64,000 nucleotides of DNA from Mizuhopecten yessoensis (Eukaryota): positions 46,691-110,690 of the forward strand of contig NW_018408535.1 of the NCBI RefSeq assembly GCF_002113885.1, given 5' to 3'. Below are positions 1,775-57,930 of this stretch, piece after piece; position 1 is the stretch's first letter; each line of letters opens with the position of its first letter. The position numbers and the translations under genes are program-made. A model generated the notes under the pieces. That model was not told where the DNA came from. It ran no database searches and worked only from the letters and a program-made list of their open reading frames with translations.

Positions 1775-2785
1775 AACGGGTACATATATTGTAGTATGCG
1801 AGGGTCAGTTACACTACATGCTAGTGCGAGCTCTGTTTATAAATAGATACGGGTACATATATTGTAGTATGCGAGGGTCAGTTACACTACATGCTAGTGT
1901 AAGGTCTGTTTATAAATAGACACGGGTAGTATGCGAGTGTTAGTTACACTACATGCTAGTGCGAGCTCTGTTTTTAAATAGATACGGGTAGTATCCGAGG
2001 GTCAGTTACACTACATGCTAGTGTAAGGTCTGTTTATAAATAGACACGGGTAGTATGCGAGGGTTAGTTACACTACATGCTAGTGCGAGCTCTGTTTATA
2101 AATAGATACGGGTAGTATCCGAGGGTCAGTTACACTACATGCTAGTGTGGGCTCTGTTTATAATAAGATACGGGTAGTATGAGAGGGTCAGTTACACTAC
2201 ATGCTTGTGTGAGCTCTGTTTATAATTAGATACGGGTAGTATGCGAGGGTCAGTTACACTACATGCTAGTGTGGGCTCTGTTTATAATTAGATACGGGTA
2301 GTACGCGAGGGTCAGTTACACTACATGCTAGTGTAAGTTTTTTTTATAAATAGATACGGGTAGTATGCGAGGGTCAGTTACCCTACATGCTAGTGTAAGG
2401 TCTGTTTATAAATAAATACAGGTAGTATGCGAGGGTCAGTTACCCTACATTCTAGTGTAAGGTCTGTTTATAAATAGATACGGGTAGTATGCGAGGGTTA
2501 GTTCACTACATGCTAGTGTGGGCTCTGTTTATAATTAGATACTGGTAGTATGCGAGGGTCAGTTACACTACATGCTAGTGTAAGGTCTGTTTATAAATAA
2601 ATACAGGTAGTATGCGAGGGTCAGTTACACTACATGCTAGTGTAAGGTCTGTTTATAAATAGATACGGGTAGTATGCGAGGGTCAGTTACACTACATGCT
2701 AGTGTAAGGTTTTTTTATAAATAGATACGGGTAGTATGCGAGGGTCAGTTACACTACATGCTAGTGCGAGCTCTGTTTATAAATA
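1775..2785. repeat. 62-bp minisatellite, ~16 copies
   Basis: Unit AAATAGATACGGGTAGTATGCGAGGGTCAGTTACACTACATGCTAGTGTAAGGTCTGTTTAT. Confidence 0.95.
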
Positions 2786-11065: not shown

Positions 11066-12552
11066 TTATCGTTTTTCAATTGCACTTCGGAGGATCCCAT
11101 TTTTTGGTGGGTTCTTCCTCTTTGATTTCTTAAGAACTGGAGAGCCTGATCTACCTACGTCCGACTTGGGTCTATTAGCAGGCTCGTCCTTTTCATTACT
11201 GCCGTCGGCATTTTTATCACTTCTGGTGTAGTGAGGAAGAGTTCCGGTATTTTTATCACTTCTGGTGTAGTGAGGAAGAGTTCCGGTATTTTTATCGAAC
11301 GCGTATCGACTCTGGATAGGCTTTCTTGTTTTTGCAGCCTTTTTTGCCGGATGTCTGTTTTCCTTCCTATATTGGTCTGCTGGGGTTTTGTTTGATGTCA
11401 CTGATGCGTCAGTGTTGATAGTATCATTTTGACCGACGACTCGTGGGGTCACATCTTCGTTCGTGTTTTGTTCGACTAAATGATGATCGTCATCTGATAC
11501 AGTATTTTGTTTTTGTCGGTCAATATCTCGTGCTACGGATTTCCTTGGTTCCTCTTCAATAATGTCTTTCTGTATTGATAGTTCCGATTCTTTCGATTGT
11601 TCTGTGCGATTTGTCTTTACATCTTCGTTGTTATCCTCAGACGAGACATCATTATGAGCAGGAGTTGATTTTGAAATTGATTCTTTTATAGTTTTCCTAG
11701 ACTGAGAGCCTTGTTGCTTTTCCACATATTTAGTTATTGGTGTGGTTTCATTTCCATGGAAAAACGGCCGTGCTTCTACAGACTCAGACCCTTGTTGCTT
11801 TTCCACATATTTAGTTTTTGGTGTGATTTCAGTTCCATAGAAAGGCCGTGCTTCTACAGAAGTATGATTTTGTCCATATGCTGCTCTCTCCTGTCTTATC
11901 GGTTCGTCTTTGCATTTATCGCAAATGTTGATGTCTCCTATTAAACAATCACATCCTTTCTCTGTTTTGTTCTTTGGAAACTCATGTTGACATTTACAAC
12001 AGAACAGAGAGTACGGGCATGGTCCATGTAATCCGAGGTCAGTTCCGAATCTGCCTTCAGGCGTAATCTGTCCGCAGTATAGAGGAGAGGTCCGATGTCT
12101 ATATTGGTTGGTGATACCCAGTAATGGTGTCATACAAGTTGATCTGGTCACTGTTTCTGGACGATGAACTGTAGAAGGGTGAACTTTGCCACTGTGAAAA
12201 GACACCGTGGGTGTAGATCTATCAACGAATGGGCCTTTCGACTGCACTTTAGCGCATTCACCACACATAGACATAACCGGTGTCGGACTTGCTGTACCTG
12301 CTTGTGACATGTGCTTATGTTTTTCCACTGCTTTGGTCTGAGCCTCGTTATCAAGTACAATGTGCTTGACTCTATCCTCATTCATTACTATCTTATTGTT
12401 ACGACTTTTCTCACATAAAAGCATTACCAGGAGCAATATCGCTGCTATAAGTGCTAACACCGCCGCGAGAGCAGCAAAGGCAAAGGCAAAATGAAGACAG
12501 CCATTCTCAGCGTTGATTCCGAACAAGATGACACCGGCAAGTATCAGGATAA
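11066..12552 (-). CDS. Gene A exon 3: claudin/PMP22-like tetraspan protein (end of TM3, TM4, long Cys/His-containing cytoplasmic tail)
   Basis: Acceptor ttccAG at 12554-12553, phase 1. In frame with the 486-aa ORF; stop at 11066. Hydrophobic HFAFAFAALAAVLALIAAILLLVMLLC. Confidence 0.9.
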
Positions 12553-12789: not shown

Positions 12790-13011
12790 AAACCAGGTAT
12801 CAGTTTTAATTTATGAAAACGGCAATTATTAACAACATCACAAAGTATTTACTTACCGCATATGCACAGTTATGCGATCAAAATTATGCGAAAAACCAGG
12901 AAACCAGGTATCGGTTTTAATTTTTGAAAACGGCAATTATTAACAACATCACAAAGTATTTACTTACCGCATATGCACAGTAATGCGATCAAAATTATGC
13001 GAAAAACCAGG
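12790..13011. repeat. 111-bp tandem duplication spanning gene A exon-2 3' end and donor
   Basis: 12790-12900 matches 12901-13011, bounded by AAACCAGG microhomology; second GTAAGT donor after 12857. Confidence 0.9.
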
Positions 13012-13111: not shown

Positions 13112-14506
13112 CTGTAAGTATAATAATAAAACAATTACTGCCAGTACAATACAACATCTGTAATTTGGTAATCATGAACCATAAAAACAGAGTGATTCTG
13201 GGATGTCGAGTTAGCTAATTTTCAAATTTATAGGAACATGAGTTTTACCGCCTTACTTATGAAATTAAAAAATTAACAAATGAGGAAAGATAAATTTGAT
13301 AATCAACCATCACTGATAAAGGAGACTTTTTCTCCCAAAATGTCTATATTATATCTAGCAAAACCTATTTACCTCTTGGGAATATACTGCTCCCGGCTCC
13401 GATCGGTGGAACAAATACCATGACTTTGACACCACAATAGAATAGTACGTGGCAAAACAGTTTTACTTGAAATCATTAGTAGACAATTGACCAATGGAAC
13501 AACGTCCAGTGTGCTACCCATTTATTGGTAACAAAAAAGGTTTACCAACTCCTAGCAGGTTTATCCAATGAGTTGGGAGTAAGAATATTCTGTTAGTTGA
13601 GGGGGGAAATAACACAAGTTGATATGGGAACAAGAGATAAAAGGGTACCTTGATGAGCCACGAAATAAATAATATCAATATTATTATTATTAGAGCCTGT
13701 TCAAAACTACGATATAAGTTGTCCTTCAACACCGGAAGTCGAACACATGCCCACCAGCCGACCGAGCGTCAAACACTGCAATATTCGATTGGTGCTAGAA
13801 AGTCTGATTTACAGAGTGGTCTTGATAACCAAAGTCTTAATTTACAAAACAATGCACTAAAACGTTCTGAAAGTTATTTCATTTGATATGTCATGTCATT
13901 TTGTAGTTCTGGTATATTTTAGTAAATTTGTAGTAAATATATACAGTCAGGACATTCCTACCTACAGGTATGTAGTTGTATTTTTATGTAAACAAATTGA
14001 CTCACATACTTAAGTGTCGTCTTTACAATGAAAGATATTGTTTAAATGAAGAATTAAAATGTTCGATGAAATTAAGAAACGAAATATTTCTAAAAGTCGC
14101 CAAACAAGGACACGATAAAGCAGCATCAACACACAAGAACAAAATATACTATAGCCCCAACATACATTGACAAACTGGAACCCAGCGTGAACAACAGGGA
14201 TACACATACATTATTAGCGTCAAACTTAGGGACAAAAGTTACCACAACATCATCACAATATGACAAATTATATCACAGTGGCATCAAACCGGGAGATTTA
14301 ATACCATACCGTCCACAAAAGGGAAAATACATATTCAACATTAAACACAAATCCTACCACGTTAATACATTTTGATGAAATATACCACATATTCAACATA
14401 AAGCACAATCCTACCACGTCAATACATTTTGATAAAATATAGCACAACGCATCACACGGGTTTAACTATACCACAGAGTCAACATACAAAACAAAGTATA
14501 CAACGT

Positions 14507-31124: not shown

Positions 31125-33022
31125 CTAAAACTGGCCTTTCCATTTAGGAGGTACCCATTTATGTTTTTTCTTCTTGGTCTTTTGAGTACCAGACTCATCG
31201 CCTGCATTTTGAATGCCGTTATGATTGGCGTCTGATTCCGACTTAGGTCTCTTTGAATCGTTTGTCAGTGTATTGCCAACATGATTGTCATACTGACTGA
31301 GTATCCGTGGTTTCTTTCGTGGATTATTGCTTCCATGTGGCTTGGTATCGCCATTTGTGTTCGGTTTTACAGGAGGCTTCCCACCACTAAGAGTATCTTT
31401 GTCGCTAGGGCTCGACACTGGCGTCCTGACTTGTTCCTCACCTACATATGGATGTTCAGCTCTATTTGATGGTGACTCTACTGGTGTTTCGTTTCTATTA
31501 ATGCCCGATTTTCCTGATGGTTTTGCATCATTACGAATATTGCTCTTGTAAGTCTTCCTTGGCTTTGCTTGATGCGCATTTGGGGTTTCATATTCATCTT
31601 GATGATTTTGAAGTTTTCTCTCGTCGTAAATCCCCTCATCATCAATGTTATTGTAATTGTCATCTGCAGCATTTCCAGACGTTCTGTCATCATTGTTGTC
31701 ATAGGTTGAATCATTGTCGTAATCTGGAGGTTGAAACTCAGATGAGTCATCACTACTGGACGGATGTGTTCCAAACATAACGTGTTTCCTTTGTTGTGCC
31801 TTGTCAATACTGTTCTTAGGTTTGTCTCTGTCACCAACTTGATCGTCGAGAGATGTTTTTGATTGGACTGGTGCATTAGAACGGTAGACCCGTGCATTAG
31901 GTTTAATGGCACTTGCTGGTTGTCCATGGTTTTGTTTGCGGGGAACAACATTGTTTATTTCGCGTTTTGCTAGACATTTGTCACACAACTTTATGTCACC
32001 AAGTTGGCAATCACATAAGTAATTCCCGTTTCGTCCGTTCAGTTGTTCATTTCGGTTGTGTTCCGTTGACTTGCTTTGTATGCTATGTTTACAACGACAA
32101 CAAAAGACAGAGAAGGGACAAGGTGCGTGTGGACCATGATGTACACTGAATGCGCTGGCTGGAACATTTCGACCACAAGGTATTATGGTAGATCTGTGGT
32201 GATTCCATTTCCGGTTCCGTTCTCCATTTTCATGCTGCGGTGTCATACAAGTTGATCTATTAGTACATATTGGTTGATATTTGTTATAGTTTATTCCGGT
32301 CGTAACACTGTGTGCGTTTTCAGACTTTTTACTCTGCATTTGATCTACTTTGGGCTGTTGTATTGGTTCCTGATGTAACCAGGAGGCCGATGTCGCTACA
32401 TCTCTGTGCTGTAGTGGGGTGATCGATGTTGATCTGTCAATACCAGTGAGGCGTTTGTACGAATCCCGTCCACGCGTAACACATACTGTTTCATGTAATT
32501 CCCTTCCCAACGTTGTTTGACATTGTCTATCCTTGTTTACATGACAACATTTACAACATGTAAACAAACAGCAAAACCTACAGCATTTACAATACTTGCA
32601 TTCTTTTTCATCAAGGAGTGGTTTGACCGGGGTTGACGTTTGCCGCGAGATTTGAGTTGTTGTTCTGATGTATTCCGTATGTTTCTCGTTGGCTGGTTCT
32701 ACTCTAGACGAGCGTCTCAACGAAAACTGTGAACTGTTTCTTGACAATTTCGTATTTTCCCTAGTCCATGCCGGTGTCGGTTCTCGTTCAATCACAACAG
32801 AGGAAGATGTCGTTGGATCTCGCCCCATCACTGATATGTCGTTATGCTTATCACTATGGCTGCGTGTCTGGCAACAATTGTAACATGAATACACGACAAG
32901 AAGTAAAACGGCAGCAATCAGTACGAAGACGGCAGCGACCAATGCCAGACCGAAAGACACATACAGTTGTTCCATTGGAGAATTCAGTCCATAAATGATG
33001 ATACCAACGATGATGAGTGTCG
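31125..33022 (-). CDS. Gene C exon 3 (end of TM3, TM4, ~580-aa cytoplasmic tail with Cys-rich modules)
   Basis: ttttttgtAG acceptor, phase 1, in frame with the 637-aa ORF; homologous to gene A exon 3. Confidence 0.92.
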
Positions 33023-33376
33023 CTACAAAAAAAACCACAACAATTTATCTTATGTTGGTGAAATTAAAACGAATTTAATTAAGAAATGTGAATTTTGATA
33101 ACTACGTGGCTTTTAGATATACCATCATAACACACATGACGGAATATTTTTATCAATTTTGGAACAATTGTTTCCTTTTCTTTCAGTAGATAACATTAAA
33201 CATATGTTACTGTAAAATAGCAGATGTAAATATAATTTATATTGTTTCGATAGGAAACTGAATGCCTTGTTTGTCACCAAACTTGTTTTCTTTATATGCG
33301 AAACTCTTATAGTCATGAGTAGTACTACACCAGATTGGCTAACCATGAGTAGTGTATTCATCATAAGCATTACTTT

Positions 33377-34806
33377 GGTAAATACATCAGCTGTGAGTAA
33401 TAGTAGGACAGATTTCACTACTTACCAGCCATAAGTAGTGATATGGTAAATACATCAGCTGTGAGTAATAGTAGAACAGATTTCACTACTTACCAGCCAT
33501 AAGTAGTGATATGGTAAATACATCAGCTGTGAGTAATAGTAGAACAGATTTCACTACTTACCAGCCATAAGTAGTGATATGGTAAATACATCAGCTGTGA
33601 GTAATAGTAGAACAGATTTCACTACTTACCGGCCACACAAGTAGTGATATGGTAAATACATCAGCTGTGGGGAATAGTAGGACAGATTTCACTACTTACC
33701 GGCCATAAGTAGTGATATGGTAAATGCATCAGCTGTGTGTGATAGTAGGATATATTTCACTACTTACCAGCCATAAGTAGTGATACGGTAAATACATCAG
33801 CTGTGTGTGATAGTAGGACATATTTCACTACTTACCGGCCATAAGTAGTGATATGGTAAATACATCAGCTGTGTTCAATAGTAGAACAGATTTCAGTACT
33901 TATCGGCCATAGGAAGTGATATCGTAAATATATCAACTGTGTGTGATAGTAGAACAGATTTCACTACTTACCGGCCATAAGTAGTGATACGGTACATACA
34001 TCAGCTGTGAGTAATAGTAGGACGGATTTCACTACTTACCGGCCATAAGTAGTGATATGGTAAATACATCAGCTGTGTGTAATAGTAGGACAGATTTCAC
34101 TGCTTACCGGCCATAAGTAGTGATATGGTACATACATCAGCTGTGAGTAATAGTAGGACAGATTTCACTACTTACCGGCCATAAGTAGTGATATGGTAAA
34201 TACATCAGCTGTGAGTAATAGTAGGACAGATTTCACTACTTACCGGCCATAAGTAGTGATATGGTAAATACATCAGCTGTGAGTAATAGTAGGACAGATT
34301 TCACTACTTACCGGCCATAAGTAGTGATATGGTAAATACATCAGCTGTGAGTAATAGTAGGACAGATTTCACTACTTACCGGCCATAAGTAGTGATATGG
34401 TAAATACATCAGCTGTGAGTAATAGTAGGACAGATTTCACTACTTACCGGCCATAAGTAGTGATATGGTAAATACATCAGCTGTGAGTAATAGTAGGACA
34501 GATTTCACTACTTACCGGCCATAAGTAGTGATATGGTAAATACATCAGCTGTGAGTAATAGTAGGACAGATTTCACTACTTACCGGCCATAAGTAGTGAT
34601 ATGGTAAATACATCAGCTGTGAGTAATAGTAGGACAGATTTCACTACTTACCGGCCATAAGTAGTGATATGGTAAATACATCAGCTGTGTGTAATAGTAG
34701 AACAGATTTCACTACTTACCGGCCATAAGTAGTGATATGGTAAATACATCAGCTGTGTGTAATAGTTGAACAGATTTCACTACTTACCGGCCATAAGTAG
34801 TGATAT
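33377..34806. repeat. 68-bp tandem array (~21 units) built from the gene C exon-2 end plus splice donor
   Basis: Minus-strand unit tcctactattactcacAG CTGATGTATTTACCATATCACTACTTATGGCCG GTAAGTagtgaaatctg; its last 19 exon-like nt equal the exon-2 3' end. Confidence 0.95.
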
Positions 34807-34931
34807 AACTATGACGGCGTGGAGTATTTCCTTCCAGGAGACGTCCATGAGATACACAACCATTCCCACTAGTGCCAGGAATAAAAGGAACAAGGCCATC
34901 ATTTCCAGTGTCCGTACGATATCCAGCCAGA
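34788..34931 (-). CDS. Gene C exon 2, 144 nt
   Basis: gtttcAG acceptor, G|GTAAGT donor; VWLDIVRTLEMMALFLLFLALVG... Confidence 0.92.
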
Positions 34932-36708: not shown

Positions 36709-36904
36709 CTTCTGGTGTGGAGTGACTCCAACATTCTGACCAGCCGCTGTATGTAAGACATGTCGACCACAGTCCCTGTGTGACGTCACCTGTGGGGACA
36801 GTGGTTATCTGCCAGAATGGTAGTGCTACAGCTAGGATGTGGACAGAGATGGCAGCCAACGTCACACTTAGGGCGGCTATCACACAACATCTTCTGGGCT
36901 TCAT
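36709..36904 (-). CDS. Gene C exon 1: claudin/PMP22-like protein; join(36904-36709,34931-34788,33022-31125) = 745 aa (alternative donor at 36697 adds 4 aa)
   Basis: MKPRRCCVIAALSVTLAAISVHILAVALPFW...QGLWSTCLTYSGWSECW; two phase-1 GT donors 12 nt apart. Confidence 0.88.
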
Positions 36905-54795: not shown

Positions 54796-55364
54796 CTAAC
54801 TTACGTACATGTAGCTGTGTCTATGGCAGACCAAGTCTTCTAACTTACGTAGCTGTGTCTTAGGCGGACCAAGTCTTCCAACTTACGTAGCTGTGTCTTA
54901 GGCGGACCAAGTCTTCTAACTTACGTAGCTGTGTCAATGGCAGACCAAGTCTTCTAACTTACGTAGATGTGTCTATGGCAGACCAAGTCTTCTAACTTAC
55001 GTAGCTGTGTCAATGGCAGACCAAGTCTTCTAACTTACGTAGATGTGTCTTAGGTGGACCAAGTCGTACTTACGTAGCTGTGTCTATGGCGGACTAAGTC
55101 TTCTAACTTACGTAGATGTGTCTTAGGCGGACCAAGTCTAACTTACAATGTACGTAGCTGTGTCTATGGCGGACTAAGTCTTCTAACTTACGTAGCTGTG
55201 TCTATGGCGGACTAAGTCTTCTAACTTACGTAGCTGTGTCTTAGGCGGACCAAGTCTTCCAACCTACGTAGCTGTGTCTATGGCGGACCAAGTCTTCTAA
55301 CTTACGTAGATGTGTCTATGGCGGACCAAGTCTTCTAACTTACGTAGCTGTGTCTTAGGCAGAC
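54796..55364. repeat. 38-bp minisatellite (~15 copies) containing a minus-strand GTAAGT donor
   Basis: CTAACTTACGTAGCTGTGTCTATGGCGGACCAAGTCTT. Confidence 0.94.
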
Positions 55365-56635: not shown

Positions 56636-56704
56636 ACAGTTCAATTATCATAATTTTTAAATTATTAACAAGCATAACCTGATAAGTATTCATAATAGCA
56701 TTTA

Positions 56705-57930
56705 AATAGCAATTATCAGGAAGTATACGATCATTCGCACTGACCTATATGATAGAATTAGAAATAGTGATTATCAGGAAATATATGATCATTTTCACTT
56801 ACCTTTATGATAGAATTAGATATAGCAATTATCAGGAAATATATGATCATTTGCACTTACCTTTATGATAGAATTAGAAATAGTAATTATCAGGAAATAT
56901 ATGATCATTTGCACTTACCTATATGATAGAATTAGAAATAATAATTATCAGGAAGTATATGATCATTTGCACATACCTTTATGTTAGAATTAGAAATAGT
57001 AATTATCAGGAAATATATGATCATTTTTCACTTACCTTTATGATAGAATTAGATATAGCAATTATCAGGAAATATATGATCATTTGGACTTACCTATATG
57101 ATAGAATTAGAAATAATAATTATCAGGAAGTATATGATCATTTGCACTTACCTTTAGGATAGAATTAGAAATAGTAATTATTAGGAAATATATGATTTTT
57201 GCACTTACCTATATGATAGAATTAGAAATAGTAATTATCAGGAAGTATATGATCATTTGCACTTACCTTTATGTTAGAATTAGAAATAGTAATTATCAGG
57301 AAGTATATGATCATTTGCACTTACATATATGATAGGATTAGAAATAGTAATTATCAGGAAGTAAATGATCATTTGCACCTACCTTTATGTTAGAATTAGA
57401 AATAGTAATTATCAGGAAGTATATGATCATTTGCACTTACCTTTAGGATAGAGTTAGAAATAGTAATTATCAGGAAATATATGATCATTTGCACTTACAT
57501 ATATGATAGAATTAGAAATAGTAATTATCAGGAAGTAAATGATCATTTGCACTTACCTTTATGTTAGAATTAGAAATAGTAATTATCAGGAAATATATGA
57601 TCATTTGCACTTACCTATATGATAGAATTAGAAACAGTAATTATCAGGAAATATATGATCATTTGCACTTACATATATGATAGAATTAGAAATAGAAATT
57701 ATCAGGAAATATATGATCATTTTCACTTACCTTTATGATAGAATTAGATATAGCAATTATCAGGAAGTATATGATCATTTGCACTTACCTTTATGATAGA
57801 ATTAGAAATAGTAATTATTAGGAAATATATGATTTTTGCACTTACCTATACGATAGAATTAGAAATAGTAATTATCAGGAAGTATATGATCATTTGCACT
57901 TACCTATATGATAGAATTAGAAATAGTAAT
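56705..57930. repeat. 58-bp minisatellite (~21 copies) containing minus-strand AG|GTAAGTG
   Basis: AATAGTAATTATCAGGAAATATATGATCATTTGCACTTACCTWTATGATAGAATTAGA. Confidence 0.95.

What the first reader, a model, noticed from the sequence alone, without database searches (positions are those of the whole stretch)
33377..34806. Splice-donor array that creates ~20 potential in-frame 33-nt microexons inside a claudin-like gene
Seen: the 68-bp unit is the last 19 nt of gene C exon 2 plus the first 49 nt of its intron, repeated ~21 times. On the coding strand each unit reads pyrimidine-rich ...tactcacAG / 33 nt / GTAAGT. The 33 nt are phase-1 compatible and stop-free in the consensus unit (A-DVFTISLLMA), and would insert into TM3. 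Neighbouring units are separated by only 35 nt, too short to splice together. Simple read-through to a downstream donor hits an in-frame TAG. Inference: this is either a nascent cassette array tuning TM3 length or a decoy/NMD rheostat whose copy number sets gene C output. It could also be a neutral coincidence.
Basis: partly seen in the sequence, partly recalled or inferred. Interest (0 to 1): 0.8.

Follow-up and report, generated by a model that had tools for sequence, protein, structure and literature searches.

The report
Splice-donor minisatellite in scallop claudin-like gene
Intron 2 of a scallop claudin-like membrane-protein gene begins with 21 tandem copies of its own exon end plus splice donor, but the one assembled RNA junction uses only the first, authentic donor, so this is most likely a tolerated boundary-spanning ('mirage') minisatellite of a kind known from human and amphioxus genes, not a microexon cassette.

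Summary
The anatomy is confirmed. A 68-bp x 21 array (33376-34806, minus strand) reiterates the last 19 nt of exon 2 plus the first 49 nt of intron 2. It gives 20 extra donor positions (18 exact GTAAGT) and 20 potential microexons (19 of 33 nt, stop-free).

The functional readings are not supported:
- In one RNA run, one contig joins 34788 directly to 33022. No microexon or downstream-donor joint was reported.
- Array RNA in a second run is colinear with the genome, so unspliced.
- The array is absent from the Pecten maximus orthologue.
- Variant units lose the donor, the frame and the hairpin without compensation.
- The in-frame property is largely inherited from the copied exon end.

This is the known class of minisatellites whose first monomer spans an exon-intron boundary: human F7, IFI6, CBS, LMNB2 and PDGFA, and amphioxus 'mirages'. 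In that class the outermost authentic site is normally used. This scan has noted many similar arrays elsewhere in this genome, which I did not check.

New here:
- The same junction is independently duplicated in paralogue gene A (111 bp x 2) and in the Ylistrum balloti orthologue (105 bp x 1.9).
- Every unit buries its donor in an 11-bp hairpin.

Depth was low and the two raw-read runs were blank, so minor isoforms are not excluded.

The parts
36709..36904 (-). Gene C exon 1. ATG at 36904. Encodes TM1 and extracellular loop 1 with a W..GLW..C..C motif. Ends in phase 1 at donor GAAG|GTACTA.
   Evidence: Sequence and ORF. RNA joint 36709->34931 in runs X1 and X2.
34788..34931 (-). Gene C exon 2, 144 nt, phase 1 to 1. 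Encodes TM2, a short loop and the first half of TM3.
   Evidence: RNA joints on both sides. Same 144-nt exon in paralogues A and B.
34782..34790 (-). Authentic donor D0, CCG|GTAAGT. This is the one seen joined to exon 3.
   Evidence: Joint 34788->33022, skipping 1765 nt with GT..AG ends on the minus strand. X1 contig of 345 nt, depth 5.4, with 123 nt on the exon 2 side.
33376..34806 (-). 68-bp x 21 minisatellite. Unit 0 holds the real exon end and donor. Units 1-20 carry pseudo-donors and units 0-20 carry pseudo-acceptors. Units 2-8 are identical; units 10-17 are the most diverged.
   Evidence: TRF. Per-unit tables. All whole-assembly matches fall in this array.
34777..34803 (-). Hairpin present in every unit, shown here for the authentic copy. 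Exon positions -16..-6 pair with intron positions +1..+11 (11 bp). The loop is the last 5 exon nucleotides, so the donor is buried in the stem.
   Evidence: RNA fold -14.4 kcal/mol, z -3.5. DNA fold -8.0 kcal/mol, z -4.6, 0 of 200 shuffles as good. Longest perfect stem among 53 arrays tested.
34720..34752 (-). First potential 33-nt microexon. Nineteen further ones follow at 68-nt spacing, the last at 33426-33458.
   Evidence: None was seen in RNA.
33391..33392 (-). AG of the last pseudo-acceptor, in the truncated final unit. No donor follows it.
33337..33358 (-). Decayed further copy of the exon-end motif just beyond the array. It has no donor.
   Evidence: (row 21).
31125..33022 (-). Gene C exon 3, the last exon. 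Encodes the second half of TM3, TM4 and a tail of about 570 aa. Includes the stop codon.
   Evidence: ORF. RNA contigs cover 31161-33022. 46% identity to the Ylistrum balloti protein P0001.
12790..13011 (-). Paralogue gene A: 111-bp x 2.0 tandem duplication of the homologous exon 2 end plus donor (two GCG|GTAAGT).
   Evidence: TRF, sequence, exon homology.

Best explanation
This is a lineage-specific intronic minisatellite of the boundary-spanning ('mirage') kind.

Origin (inferred): a 68-bp segment straddling the exon 2 / intron 2 junction of a 4-TM claudin-like gene was duplicated in tandem. It then expanded to 21 copies by slippage or unequal exchange. A 10-11-bp palindrome inside each unit may have helped.

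Effect on splicing (one junction shown): the first unit contains the true exon end. The most upstream donor is therefore the authentic one, and it is the donor joined to exon 3. The other 20 donor copies and 21 acceptor-like sites leave with the 1,765-nt intron.

Function (inferred): the copies have no demonstrated function. The 'in-frame microexon' shape is mostly inherited from the copied coding nucleotides.
For: Shown here:
- The array and unit composition are as described.
- An RNA contig joins 34788 to 33022 with GT..AG ends. It has 123 nt of unique exon 2 on one side, and there is no depth over the array in that run (X1).
- In run X2 the array appears as a 98-nt contig colinear with the genome, so the 35-nt spacers are unspliced. 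Its depth is 49.6, about 21 x 2.4, which matches the intron 1 depth of 2.1-3.4 in the same run.
- The array is absent in the Pecten maximus orthologue, which has a single donor.
- Intron starts are unalignable between species.
- Units decay. One donor is lost, one microexon is frameshifted, and variable sites number 9 of 30 in the microexon part against 13 of 38 elsewhere.
- A decayed copy without a donor lies at the array's 3' edge.
- The window is 33% tandem repeats, 25 arrays in 64 kb.

From the literature:
- Minisatellites whose first monomer spans an exon-intron boundary occur in human F7, IFI6, CBS, LMNB2 and PDGFA. In F7, LMNB2 and PDGFA only the authentic upstream donor is used. [quoted passage not shown]
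- Amphioxus 'mirages' do not disturb splicing (PMC3087553, PMC3902484).
Against: - RNA evidence is thin. There is one contig at depth 5.4, and contigs drop rare variants.
- In X2 no listed piece covers the exon 2-3 junction. The exon 2 contig stops 2 nt past the exon end.
- The two raw-read RNA runs laid no reads, so they are no test.
- The same junction is duplicated independently in paralogue A and in the Ylistrum orthologue. Under a uniform seed-unit null this is unlikely: P about 0.06 for any junction, and 0.004 for this junction, the latter post hoc.
- GTAAGT is the commonest of 90 same-composition hexamers among array units, though three of the seven arrays were ascertained for it.
- The hairpin over the donor is statistically unusual. 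It could matter at the RNA level.
Confidence: 0.75

Rival explanations
1. Decoy or NMD rheostat. A fraction of transcripts use a downstream pseudo-donor, retain GGT AAG TAG, and are degraded. Copy number then sets gene output.
For: - Most pseudo-donors are identical to the authentic one, and read-through gives an in-frame stop.
- In human IFI6 and CBS the one or two nearest pseudo-sites are used (PMC1557585).
- The X2 exon 2 contig breaks 2 nt past the exon end, which may reflect a branch in the assembly graph.
Against: - No downstream-donor joint was reported. The X1 contig runs unbranched through D0->exon 3.
- Known cases with long units (F7 37 bp, PDGFA 81 bp, LMNB2 100 bp) use only the authentic site.
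- Donor motifs in variant units show no constraint.
- The array is absent in Pecten.
Confidence: 0.1
2. Cassette microexon array. One or more 33-nt units are included between exons 2 and 3, lengthening TM3 by 11 residues per unit.
For: - 19 of 20 units are 33 nt, phase-compatible and stop-free.
- The pseudo-acceptor has about 70% pyrimidines over -20..-4, similar to the gene's real acceptors.
Against: - No such joint was seen in RNA.
- The insert puts an Asp into a membrane helix.
- Neighbouring sites are 35 nt apart. A 33-nt exon is also below the size usually needed for exon definition (established knowledge, not tested here).
- 19 of the 33 nt are inherited coding sequence, so the open frame is expected.
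- No orthologue protein carries an insert at this point.
- One unit is already frameshifted.
Confidence: 0.03
3. Regulatory RNA element. An array of 21 hairpin-masked consensus 5' splice sites acts in the pre-mRNA as a U1 snRNP platform or sink, or as a kinetic brake. It would modulate intron 2 removal, premature polyadenylation or nuclear retention.
For: - The hairpin is strong and unusual.
- Donor-containing arrays recur in this family and region.
Against: - The hairpin is not shared by the other duplicated junctions (z -0.6 and -1.2).
- Variant units break the hairpin without compensation.
- There is no direct evidence of any effect.
- The idea rests on general knowledge of U1 biology, not on a test here.
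Confidence: 0.08
4. Assembly artefact. The array length or order is a product of short-read assembly, and the real locus has one or a few copies.
For: - The assembly is fragmented (82,659 contigs).
- The seven central units are identical.
Against: - An independent RNA run contains an array contig longer than one unit. Its depth is about 15-24 times that of single-copy intron sequence in the same run.
- Units carry a structured pattern of variants.
- Six runs of undetermined kind, probably DNA, hold about 80% of the region's words.
Confidence: 0.03

Closest known systems
Human F7 intron 7 VNTR (37 bp x 5-9; Borensztajn et al. 2006, PMC1557585)
   Same: - The first monomer spans the exon-intron boundary.
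- The authentic donor is followed by identical pseudo-donors.
- Only the most upstream donor is used in mRNA.
   Different: - The scallop unit is 68 bp, with 19 exonic nt against 4 in F7.
- It has 21 copies and a near-consensus donor (GTAAGT against GTGGGT).
- Each unit also holds an acceptor-like site and a donor-masking hairpin.
- Polymorphism and pseudo-site competence are not tested here.
Human IFI6 (6-16) exon 2/intron 2 minisatellite and CBS intron 13 VNTR (as summarised in PMC1557585)
   Same: A donor-reiterating minisatellite at an exon-intron border.
   Different: There the nearest one or two pseudo-donors are used constitutively; in IFI6 the short repeat (12 nt by my recollection of Turri et al. 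1995, which I could not open) adds in-frame residues. Here read-through meets a stop after 2 codons, and no such use was seen.
Human LMNB2 (100 bp x 10-15) and PDGFA (81 bp x 16-18) boundary repeats (PMC1557585)
   Same: Long units that reiterate the exon/intron junction over most of an intron. Only the authentic donor is used.
   Different: Different genes and phylum. I could not compare sequence features.
Amphioxus 'mirage' minisatellites (Adh3, TnC, globins, PGBD5; PMC3087553, PMC3902484)
   Same: - Tandem duplications of exon-intron boundaries in an invertebrate with a repeat-rich genome.
- Units carry AG/GT signals yet normal splicing is kept.
- Concerted evolution in the array core and decay at its edges.
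   Different: Mollusc rather than cephalochordate. Length or somatic instability is not tested here.
Recursive splice sites / RS-exons
   Same: Intronic acceptor and donor signals that could in principle allow stepwise intron removal.
   Different: A recursive site needs an acceptor juxtaposed to a regenerated donor (AG|GT). Here the acceptor is followed by CTGATG, so joining exon 2 to it regenerates no donor. This defining feature is not met.
Intron gain by tandem duplication of an AGGT-containing segment (Rogers model; discussed in PMC3087553)
   Same: Tandem duplication creates paired GT and AG signals.
   Different: The GT-to-AG spacing here is 35 nt and it is unspliced in the RNA contig that covers it. 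No new intron is formed.

Membership tests
Boundary-spanning ('mirage') minisatellite | Head-to-tail tandem array of minisatellite-size units | tested here: met
   68 bp x 21.0, 95% matches.
Boundary-spanning ('mirage') minisatellite | The first (outermost) monomer contains the authentic exon-intron junction, so the splice site is reiterated in the intron | tested here: met
   Unit 0 is the last 19 nt of exon 2 plus the first 49 nt of intron 2. The exon boundary is confirmed by an RNA joint.
Boundary-spanning ('mirage') minisatellite | Normal splicing uses the authentic outermost site; copies stay silent or nearly so | tested here: met
   Joint 34788->33022 in an X1 contig, with no other joint reported. 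Depth is low, so minor use is not excluded.
Boundary-spanning ('mirage') minisatellite | Length polymorphism between alleles (VNTR behaviour) | not testable with these tools
The X2 array contig differs from every reference unit pair at 4 positions, which shows sequence variation only.
PMP22/EMP/MP20/claudin superfamily (host gene) | Four TM segments with a W..GLW..C..C motif in the first extracellular loop, and a Pfam PF00822 match | tested here: inconclusive
   The motif and four hydrophobic segments are read directly. The exons alone are below threshold (12.2 bits). The Pecten orthologue P0002:1-180 scores 30.0 bits against a cut-off of 26.7. Ylistrum P0001 scores 15.6 bits. The joined scallop protein was not searched.
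Cassette microexon | Inclusion of the segment in some mature mRNAs | tested here: not met
   No joint to any pseudo-acceptor was reported. The array is unspliced where covered. Power is limited.
Cassette microexon | Conservation of the exon and its splice sites in related species | tested here: not met
   Absent in Pecten maximus and Ylistrum balloti.
Recursive splice site | Acceptor directly followed by a donor that is regenerated after the first splicing step | tested here: not met
   The sequence after the AG is CTGATG in 19 of 20 units.
Poison-exon / NMD decoy | Detectable stop-containing isoform that uses the decoy site | tested here: inconclusive
   None was reported. However, NMD substrates are rare at steady state and depth was 5-7.

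The most novel reading that the evidence does not exclude
Donor-anchored arrays are not random debris in scallop genomes. Tandem duplications would be seeded preferentially at 5' splice sites. In this gene family 3 of 5 homologous exon 2 donors were hit independently, and GTAAGT is the top same-composition hexamer in array units. The cause would be a splice-site-linked mutational process or selection for reiterated U1 sites. Under this reading, the present array of 21 hairpin-masked consensus donors tunes intron 2 splicing kinetics or transcript output through its copy number.
Probability: 0.08. Interest if true: 0.6.

Novelty: new member of a known kind. Interest (0 to 1): 0.27.

Why it matters
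As it stands, the case shows that a striking 'microexon ladder' is probably a by-product of an extremely repeat-rich genome. It also adds a mollusc example to a class described in humans and amphioxus.

It gives a natural test bed for the rule that the most upstream of several identical donors wins. Most of the 21 donors are identical and near-consensus, each lies in a hairpin, and they are spaced 68 nt apart.

The wider question is whether scallop tandem repeats are seeded at splice junctions more often than chance. That would matter for how introns grow and how new splice sites arise. It needs a genome-wide census, which I could not run.

Tried and rejected
- Raw-read RNA runs X21 and X24 laid no reads on the gene, so they are no test.
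- Protein word searches:
  - The exon 3 translation found only the Ylistrum orthologue.
  - The Ylistrum 4-TM region found only itself and the Pecten orthologue.
  - The gene A tail found nothing.
  - So only five family genes could be compared.
  - No A or B orthologues lie within 10 kb of the Ylistrum or Pecten genes.
- I tried to sample about 400 kb more of this genome for a tandem-repeat census. The hexamer test therefore rests on 41 own arrays and 14 foreign ones.
- I tested whether the 49-nt intronic part of the unit is a degenerate copy of more of exon 2. It is not (local alignment p = 0.86).
- I tested for purifying selection on splice motifs or the microexon within the array. No signal was found, with low power.
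- I tested whether hairpins are a general property of arrays here. They are not: only 2 of 53 arrays have a significant stem.
- Turri et al. 1995 and Canestro et al. 2002 are not held in the library. They are cited only through PMC1557585 and PMC3087553.
Exons were searched separately by reference, and full-length comparisons used the database orthologues P0001 and P0002.
- The costly exhaustive protein search was not needed and not run.

Full report
**The observation**

Tandem Repeats Finder reports one array at 33376-34806: period 68, 21.0 copies, 95% matches, score 2536.

Reading the minus strand gives a three-exon gene:
- Exon 1 is 36904-36709. It has the ATG and is 196 nt.
- Exon 2 is 34931-34788, 144 nt, entering and leaving in phase 1.
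- Exon 3 is 33022-31125.

The unit is the last 19 nt of exon 2 followed by the first 49 nt of intron 2.

A per-unit table shows 20 potential microexons bounded by CACAG and GTAAGT:
- 19 are 33 nt and stop-free.
- One is 35 nt.
- One has lost its donor (ATAAGT).
- One has GTAAGC.

The spacing from each donor to the next acceptor is 35 nt. Read-through of the authentic donor gives GGT AAG TAG. All ten whole-assembly matches to three units fall inside this array, though only the best candidates are scored.

**The host gene**

The exon translations show four hydrophobic segments and a W..GLW..C..C motif after the first. The exon 2/3 junction lies in the third segment.

Exons alone are below Pfam thresholds. 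The Pecten maximus orthologue P0002:1-180 passes PMP22_Claudin at 30.0 bits against a cut-off of 26.7. The nearest proteins are from the scallops Ylistrum balloti (P0001) and Pecten maximus (P0002).

Exons were searched by reference one at a time.

**RNA evidence**

One run-finding call and one read-laying run were allowed.

Run X1:
- Depth is confined to the exons.
- A 345-nt contig at depth 5.4 joins 33022 to 34788 with GT..AG ends on the minus strand. It continues 123 nt into unique exon 2 sequence, so the donor used is the authentic, most upstream one.
- The exon 1-2 joint (36709->34931) is seen in X1 and X2.
- No joint involving a pseudo-acceptor or a downstream donor was reported.

Run X2:
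- It carries low intronic signal, at depth 2.1-3.4 in intron 1.
- The array appears as one 98-nt contig colinear with the genome, so a 35-nt spacer is unspliced.
- Its depth is 49.6, about 21 x 2.4. That is what pre-mRNA or trace DNA would give for a roughly 20-copy repeat.
- This also independently supports a high copy number.

Limits:
- Contigs drop rare variants.
- The unique part of intron 2 has no depth in X2, so coverage is patchy at this level.
- The X2 exon 2 contig stops 2 nt past the exon.
- Both raw-read runs laid nothing.

**Comparative evidence**

- Pecten maximus orthologue (L012): a single exon 2 donor and no duplication there.
- Ylistrum balloti orthologue (L011): the same junction is duplicated, but differently. 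The array is 105 bp x 1.9, made of 62 exonic plus 43 intronic nt, with two GTAAGT.
- Paralogue gene A in the window: the homologous junction is duplicated as 111 bp x 2.0.
- Paralogue B: no duplication.
- Beyond the exon end and GTAAGT, the intron starts cannot be aligned. The pseudo-acceptor has no counterpart elsewhere.

The array is therefore young and lineage-specific. Duplication of this junction has nonetheless happened at least three times with different boundaries.

**Is the recurrence more than chance?**

The window is 33% tandem repeat, 25 arrays in 64 kb, so the base rate is high.

I used a null in which each array's seed unit falls uniformly within its gene, leaving out the array I was sent to look at. 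The other ten intragenic arrays are expected to straddle a junction 0.38 times, or 0.095 times for this particular junction. Two do. That gives P about 0.06, or 0.004 for this junction, which is post hoc.

GTAAGT is the most frequent of the 90 hexamers of the same composition among array units: 5 of 41 arrays in this genome and 7 of 55 overall, against means of 1.1 and 1.4. Three of those seven arrays are the ascertained junction duplications.

Earlier notes of this scan list many other donor- or acceptor-anchored arrays in this genome, in ANAPC4, NCAPG2, NHE, PWP2, OLAH, ANAPC5 and AAMP. Those notes are unchecked leads. The recurrence is suggestive, not established.

**Signs of selection inside the array**

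- Differences from the consensus are spread over all parts. Variable sites number 9 of 30 in the microexon part against 13 of 38 elsewhere.
- Variant units lose the donor, the frame or the hairpin without compensation.
- A decayed copy without a donor lies just past the array at 33337-33358.
- The open frame is not remarkable. 19 of the 33 nt are copied coding sequence. The single usable AG had a one-in-three chance of being in phase and about a 0.8 chance of no stop in the 14 new nucleotides.
- The 49-nt intronic part shows no similarity to the rest of exon 2 (p = 0.86).

In every unit, exon positions -16..-6 are complementary to intron positions +1..+11. This gives an 11-bp stem with the last five exon nucleotides as loop (34777-34803 for the authentic copy).
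- As RNA it folds at -14.4 kcal/mol, z -3.5.
- As single-stranded DNA it folds at -8.0 kcal/mol, z -4.6.
- It is the longest perfect stem among 53 arrays tested.
- The other four family donors have no significant structure.

I infer, but have not shown, two things. The palindrome may have favoured slippage and expansion at the DNA level. At the RNA level it masks the authentic donor and the consensus pseudo-donors alike, so it does not by itself explain the choice of the first donor.

**Comparison with what is known**

Borensztajn et al. 2006 (PMC1557585) list human genes with minisatellites whose first monomer spans an exon-intron boundary:
- F7: 37 bp x 5-9.
- IFI6/6-16: 25 pseudo-sites.
- CBS: 15-20 repeats.
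- LMNB2: 100 bp x 10-15.
- PDGFA: 81 bp x 16-18.

In F7, LMNB2 and PDGFA only the authentic upstream donor is used. In IFI6 and CBS the nearest two pseudo-sites are used as well. [quoted passage not shown]

Amphioxus 'mirages' (Adh3, TnC, globins, PGBD5) are the same anatomy in an invertebrate. They are reported not to disturb splicing (PMC3087553, PMC3902484).

The scallop array meets the three testable defining features of this class; length polymorphism could not be tested. It fails the defining feature of a recursive splice site, because no donor is regenerated after the AG. It also lacks the inclusion and conservation expected of a cassette microexon.

**Verdict**

The cassette and rheostat readings are unsupported. 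The best explanation is a tolerated boundary-spanning minisatellite with the upstream authentic donor in use (confidence 0.75).

It is a new member of a known kind. The recurrence at one junction and the donor-masking hairpin are the only unusual points. Minor-isoform use remains open until deeper RNA data are laid.

Noticed in passing
window 12790-13011 (minus strand, gene A): Paralogue gene A carries a 111-bp x 2.0 tandem duplication of its own exon 2 end plus donor. There are two GCG|GTAAGT sites, and read-through gives G-K-stop. It is homologous in position to the gene C array but has different boundaries.
   Followed up: partly
L011:12250-12451 (Ylistrum balloti orthologue): A 105-bp x 1.9 duplication of the last 62 nt of exon 2 plus the first 43 nt of intron 2. 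It is the only tandem repeat of note in that 4.8-kb gene.
   Followed up: partly
L012:10432-12777 and 13846-14197 (Pecten maximus orthologue): Intron 1 holds about 90 copies of a 26-bp unit, each starting with GTAAGT on the coding strand (84 exact). A 13-bp x 27 array runs up to 3 nt before the exon 2 acceptor, and its last unit merges into the polypyrimidine tract.
   Followed up: partly
window, L013-L017, L011, L012 (55 arrays): GTAAGT is rank 1 of the 90 hexamers with the same base composition for being present in at least half the units of an array (7 of 55 arrays, mean 1.4). Three of the seven are the junction duplications I was already looking at. The arrays at 54811-55355 and 56704-57930 carry it on the minus strand without an obvious exon upstream.
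   Followed up: partly
window 1-64000: One third of the window (20.9 kb, 25 arrays, periods 23-213) is tandem repeat. The Ylistrum and Pecten loci are 51% and 26% tandem repeat.
   Followed up: yes
window 11206-11296 and 11699-11860 (gene A exon 3): Two in-frame coding tandem duplications (39 bp x 2.3 and 81 bp x 2.0) lie inside the tail of gene A. They repeat short peptide blocks.
   Followed up: no
window 34634-34731 as seen in run X2: The array contig of another animal differs at 4 positions from the reference units it lies on. It matches no reference unit pair exactly, which indicates sequence variation of the array between individuals.
   Followed up: no
window 1864-2785: A 62-bp x 15 array whose unit holds an 8-bp perfect hairpin stem (0 of 200 shuffles as long). 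It is the only other array of 53 with a significant stem.
   Followed up: no
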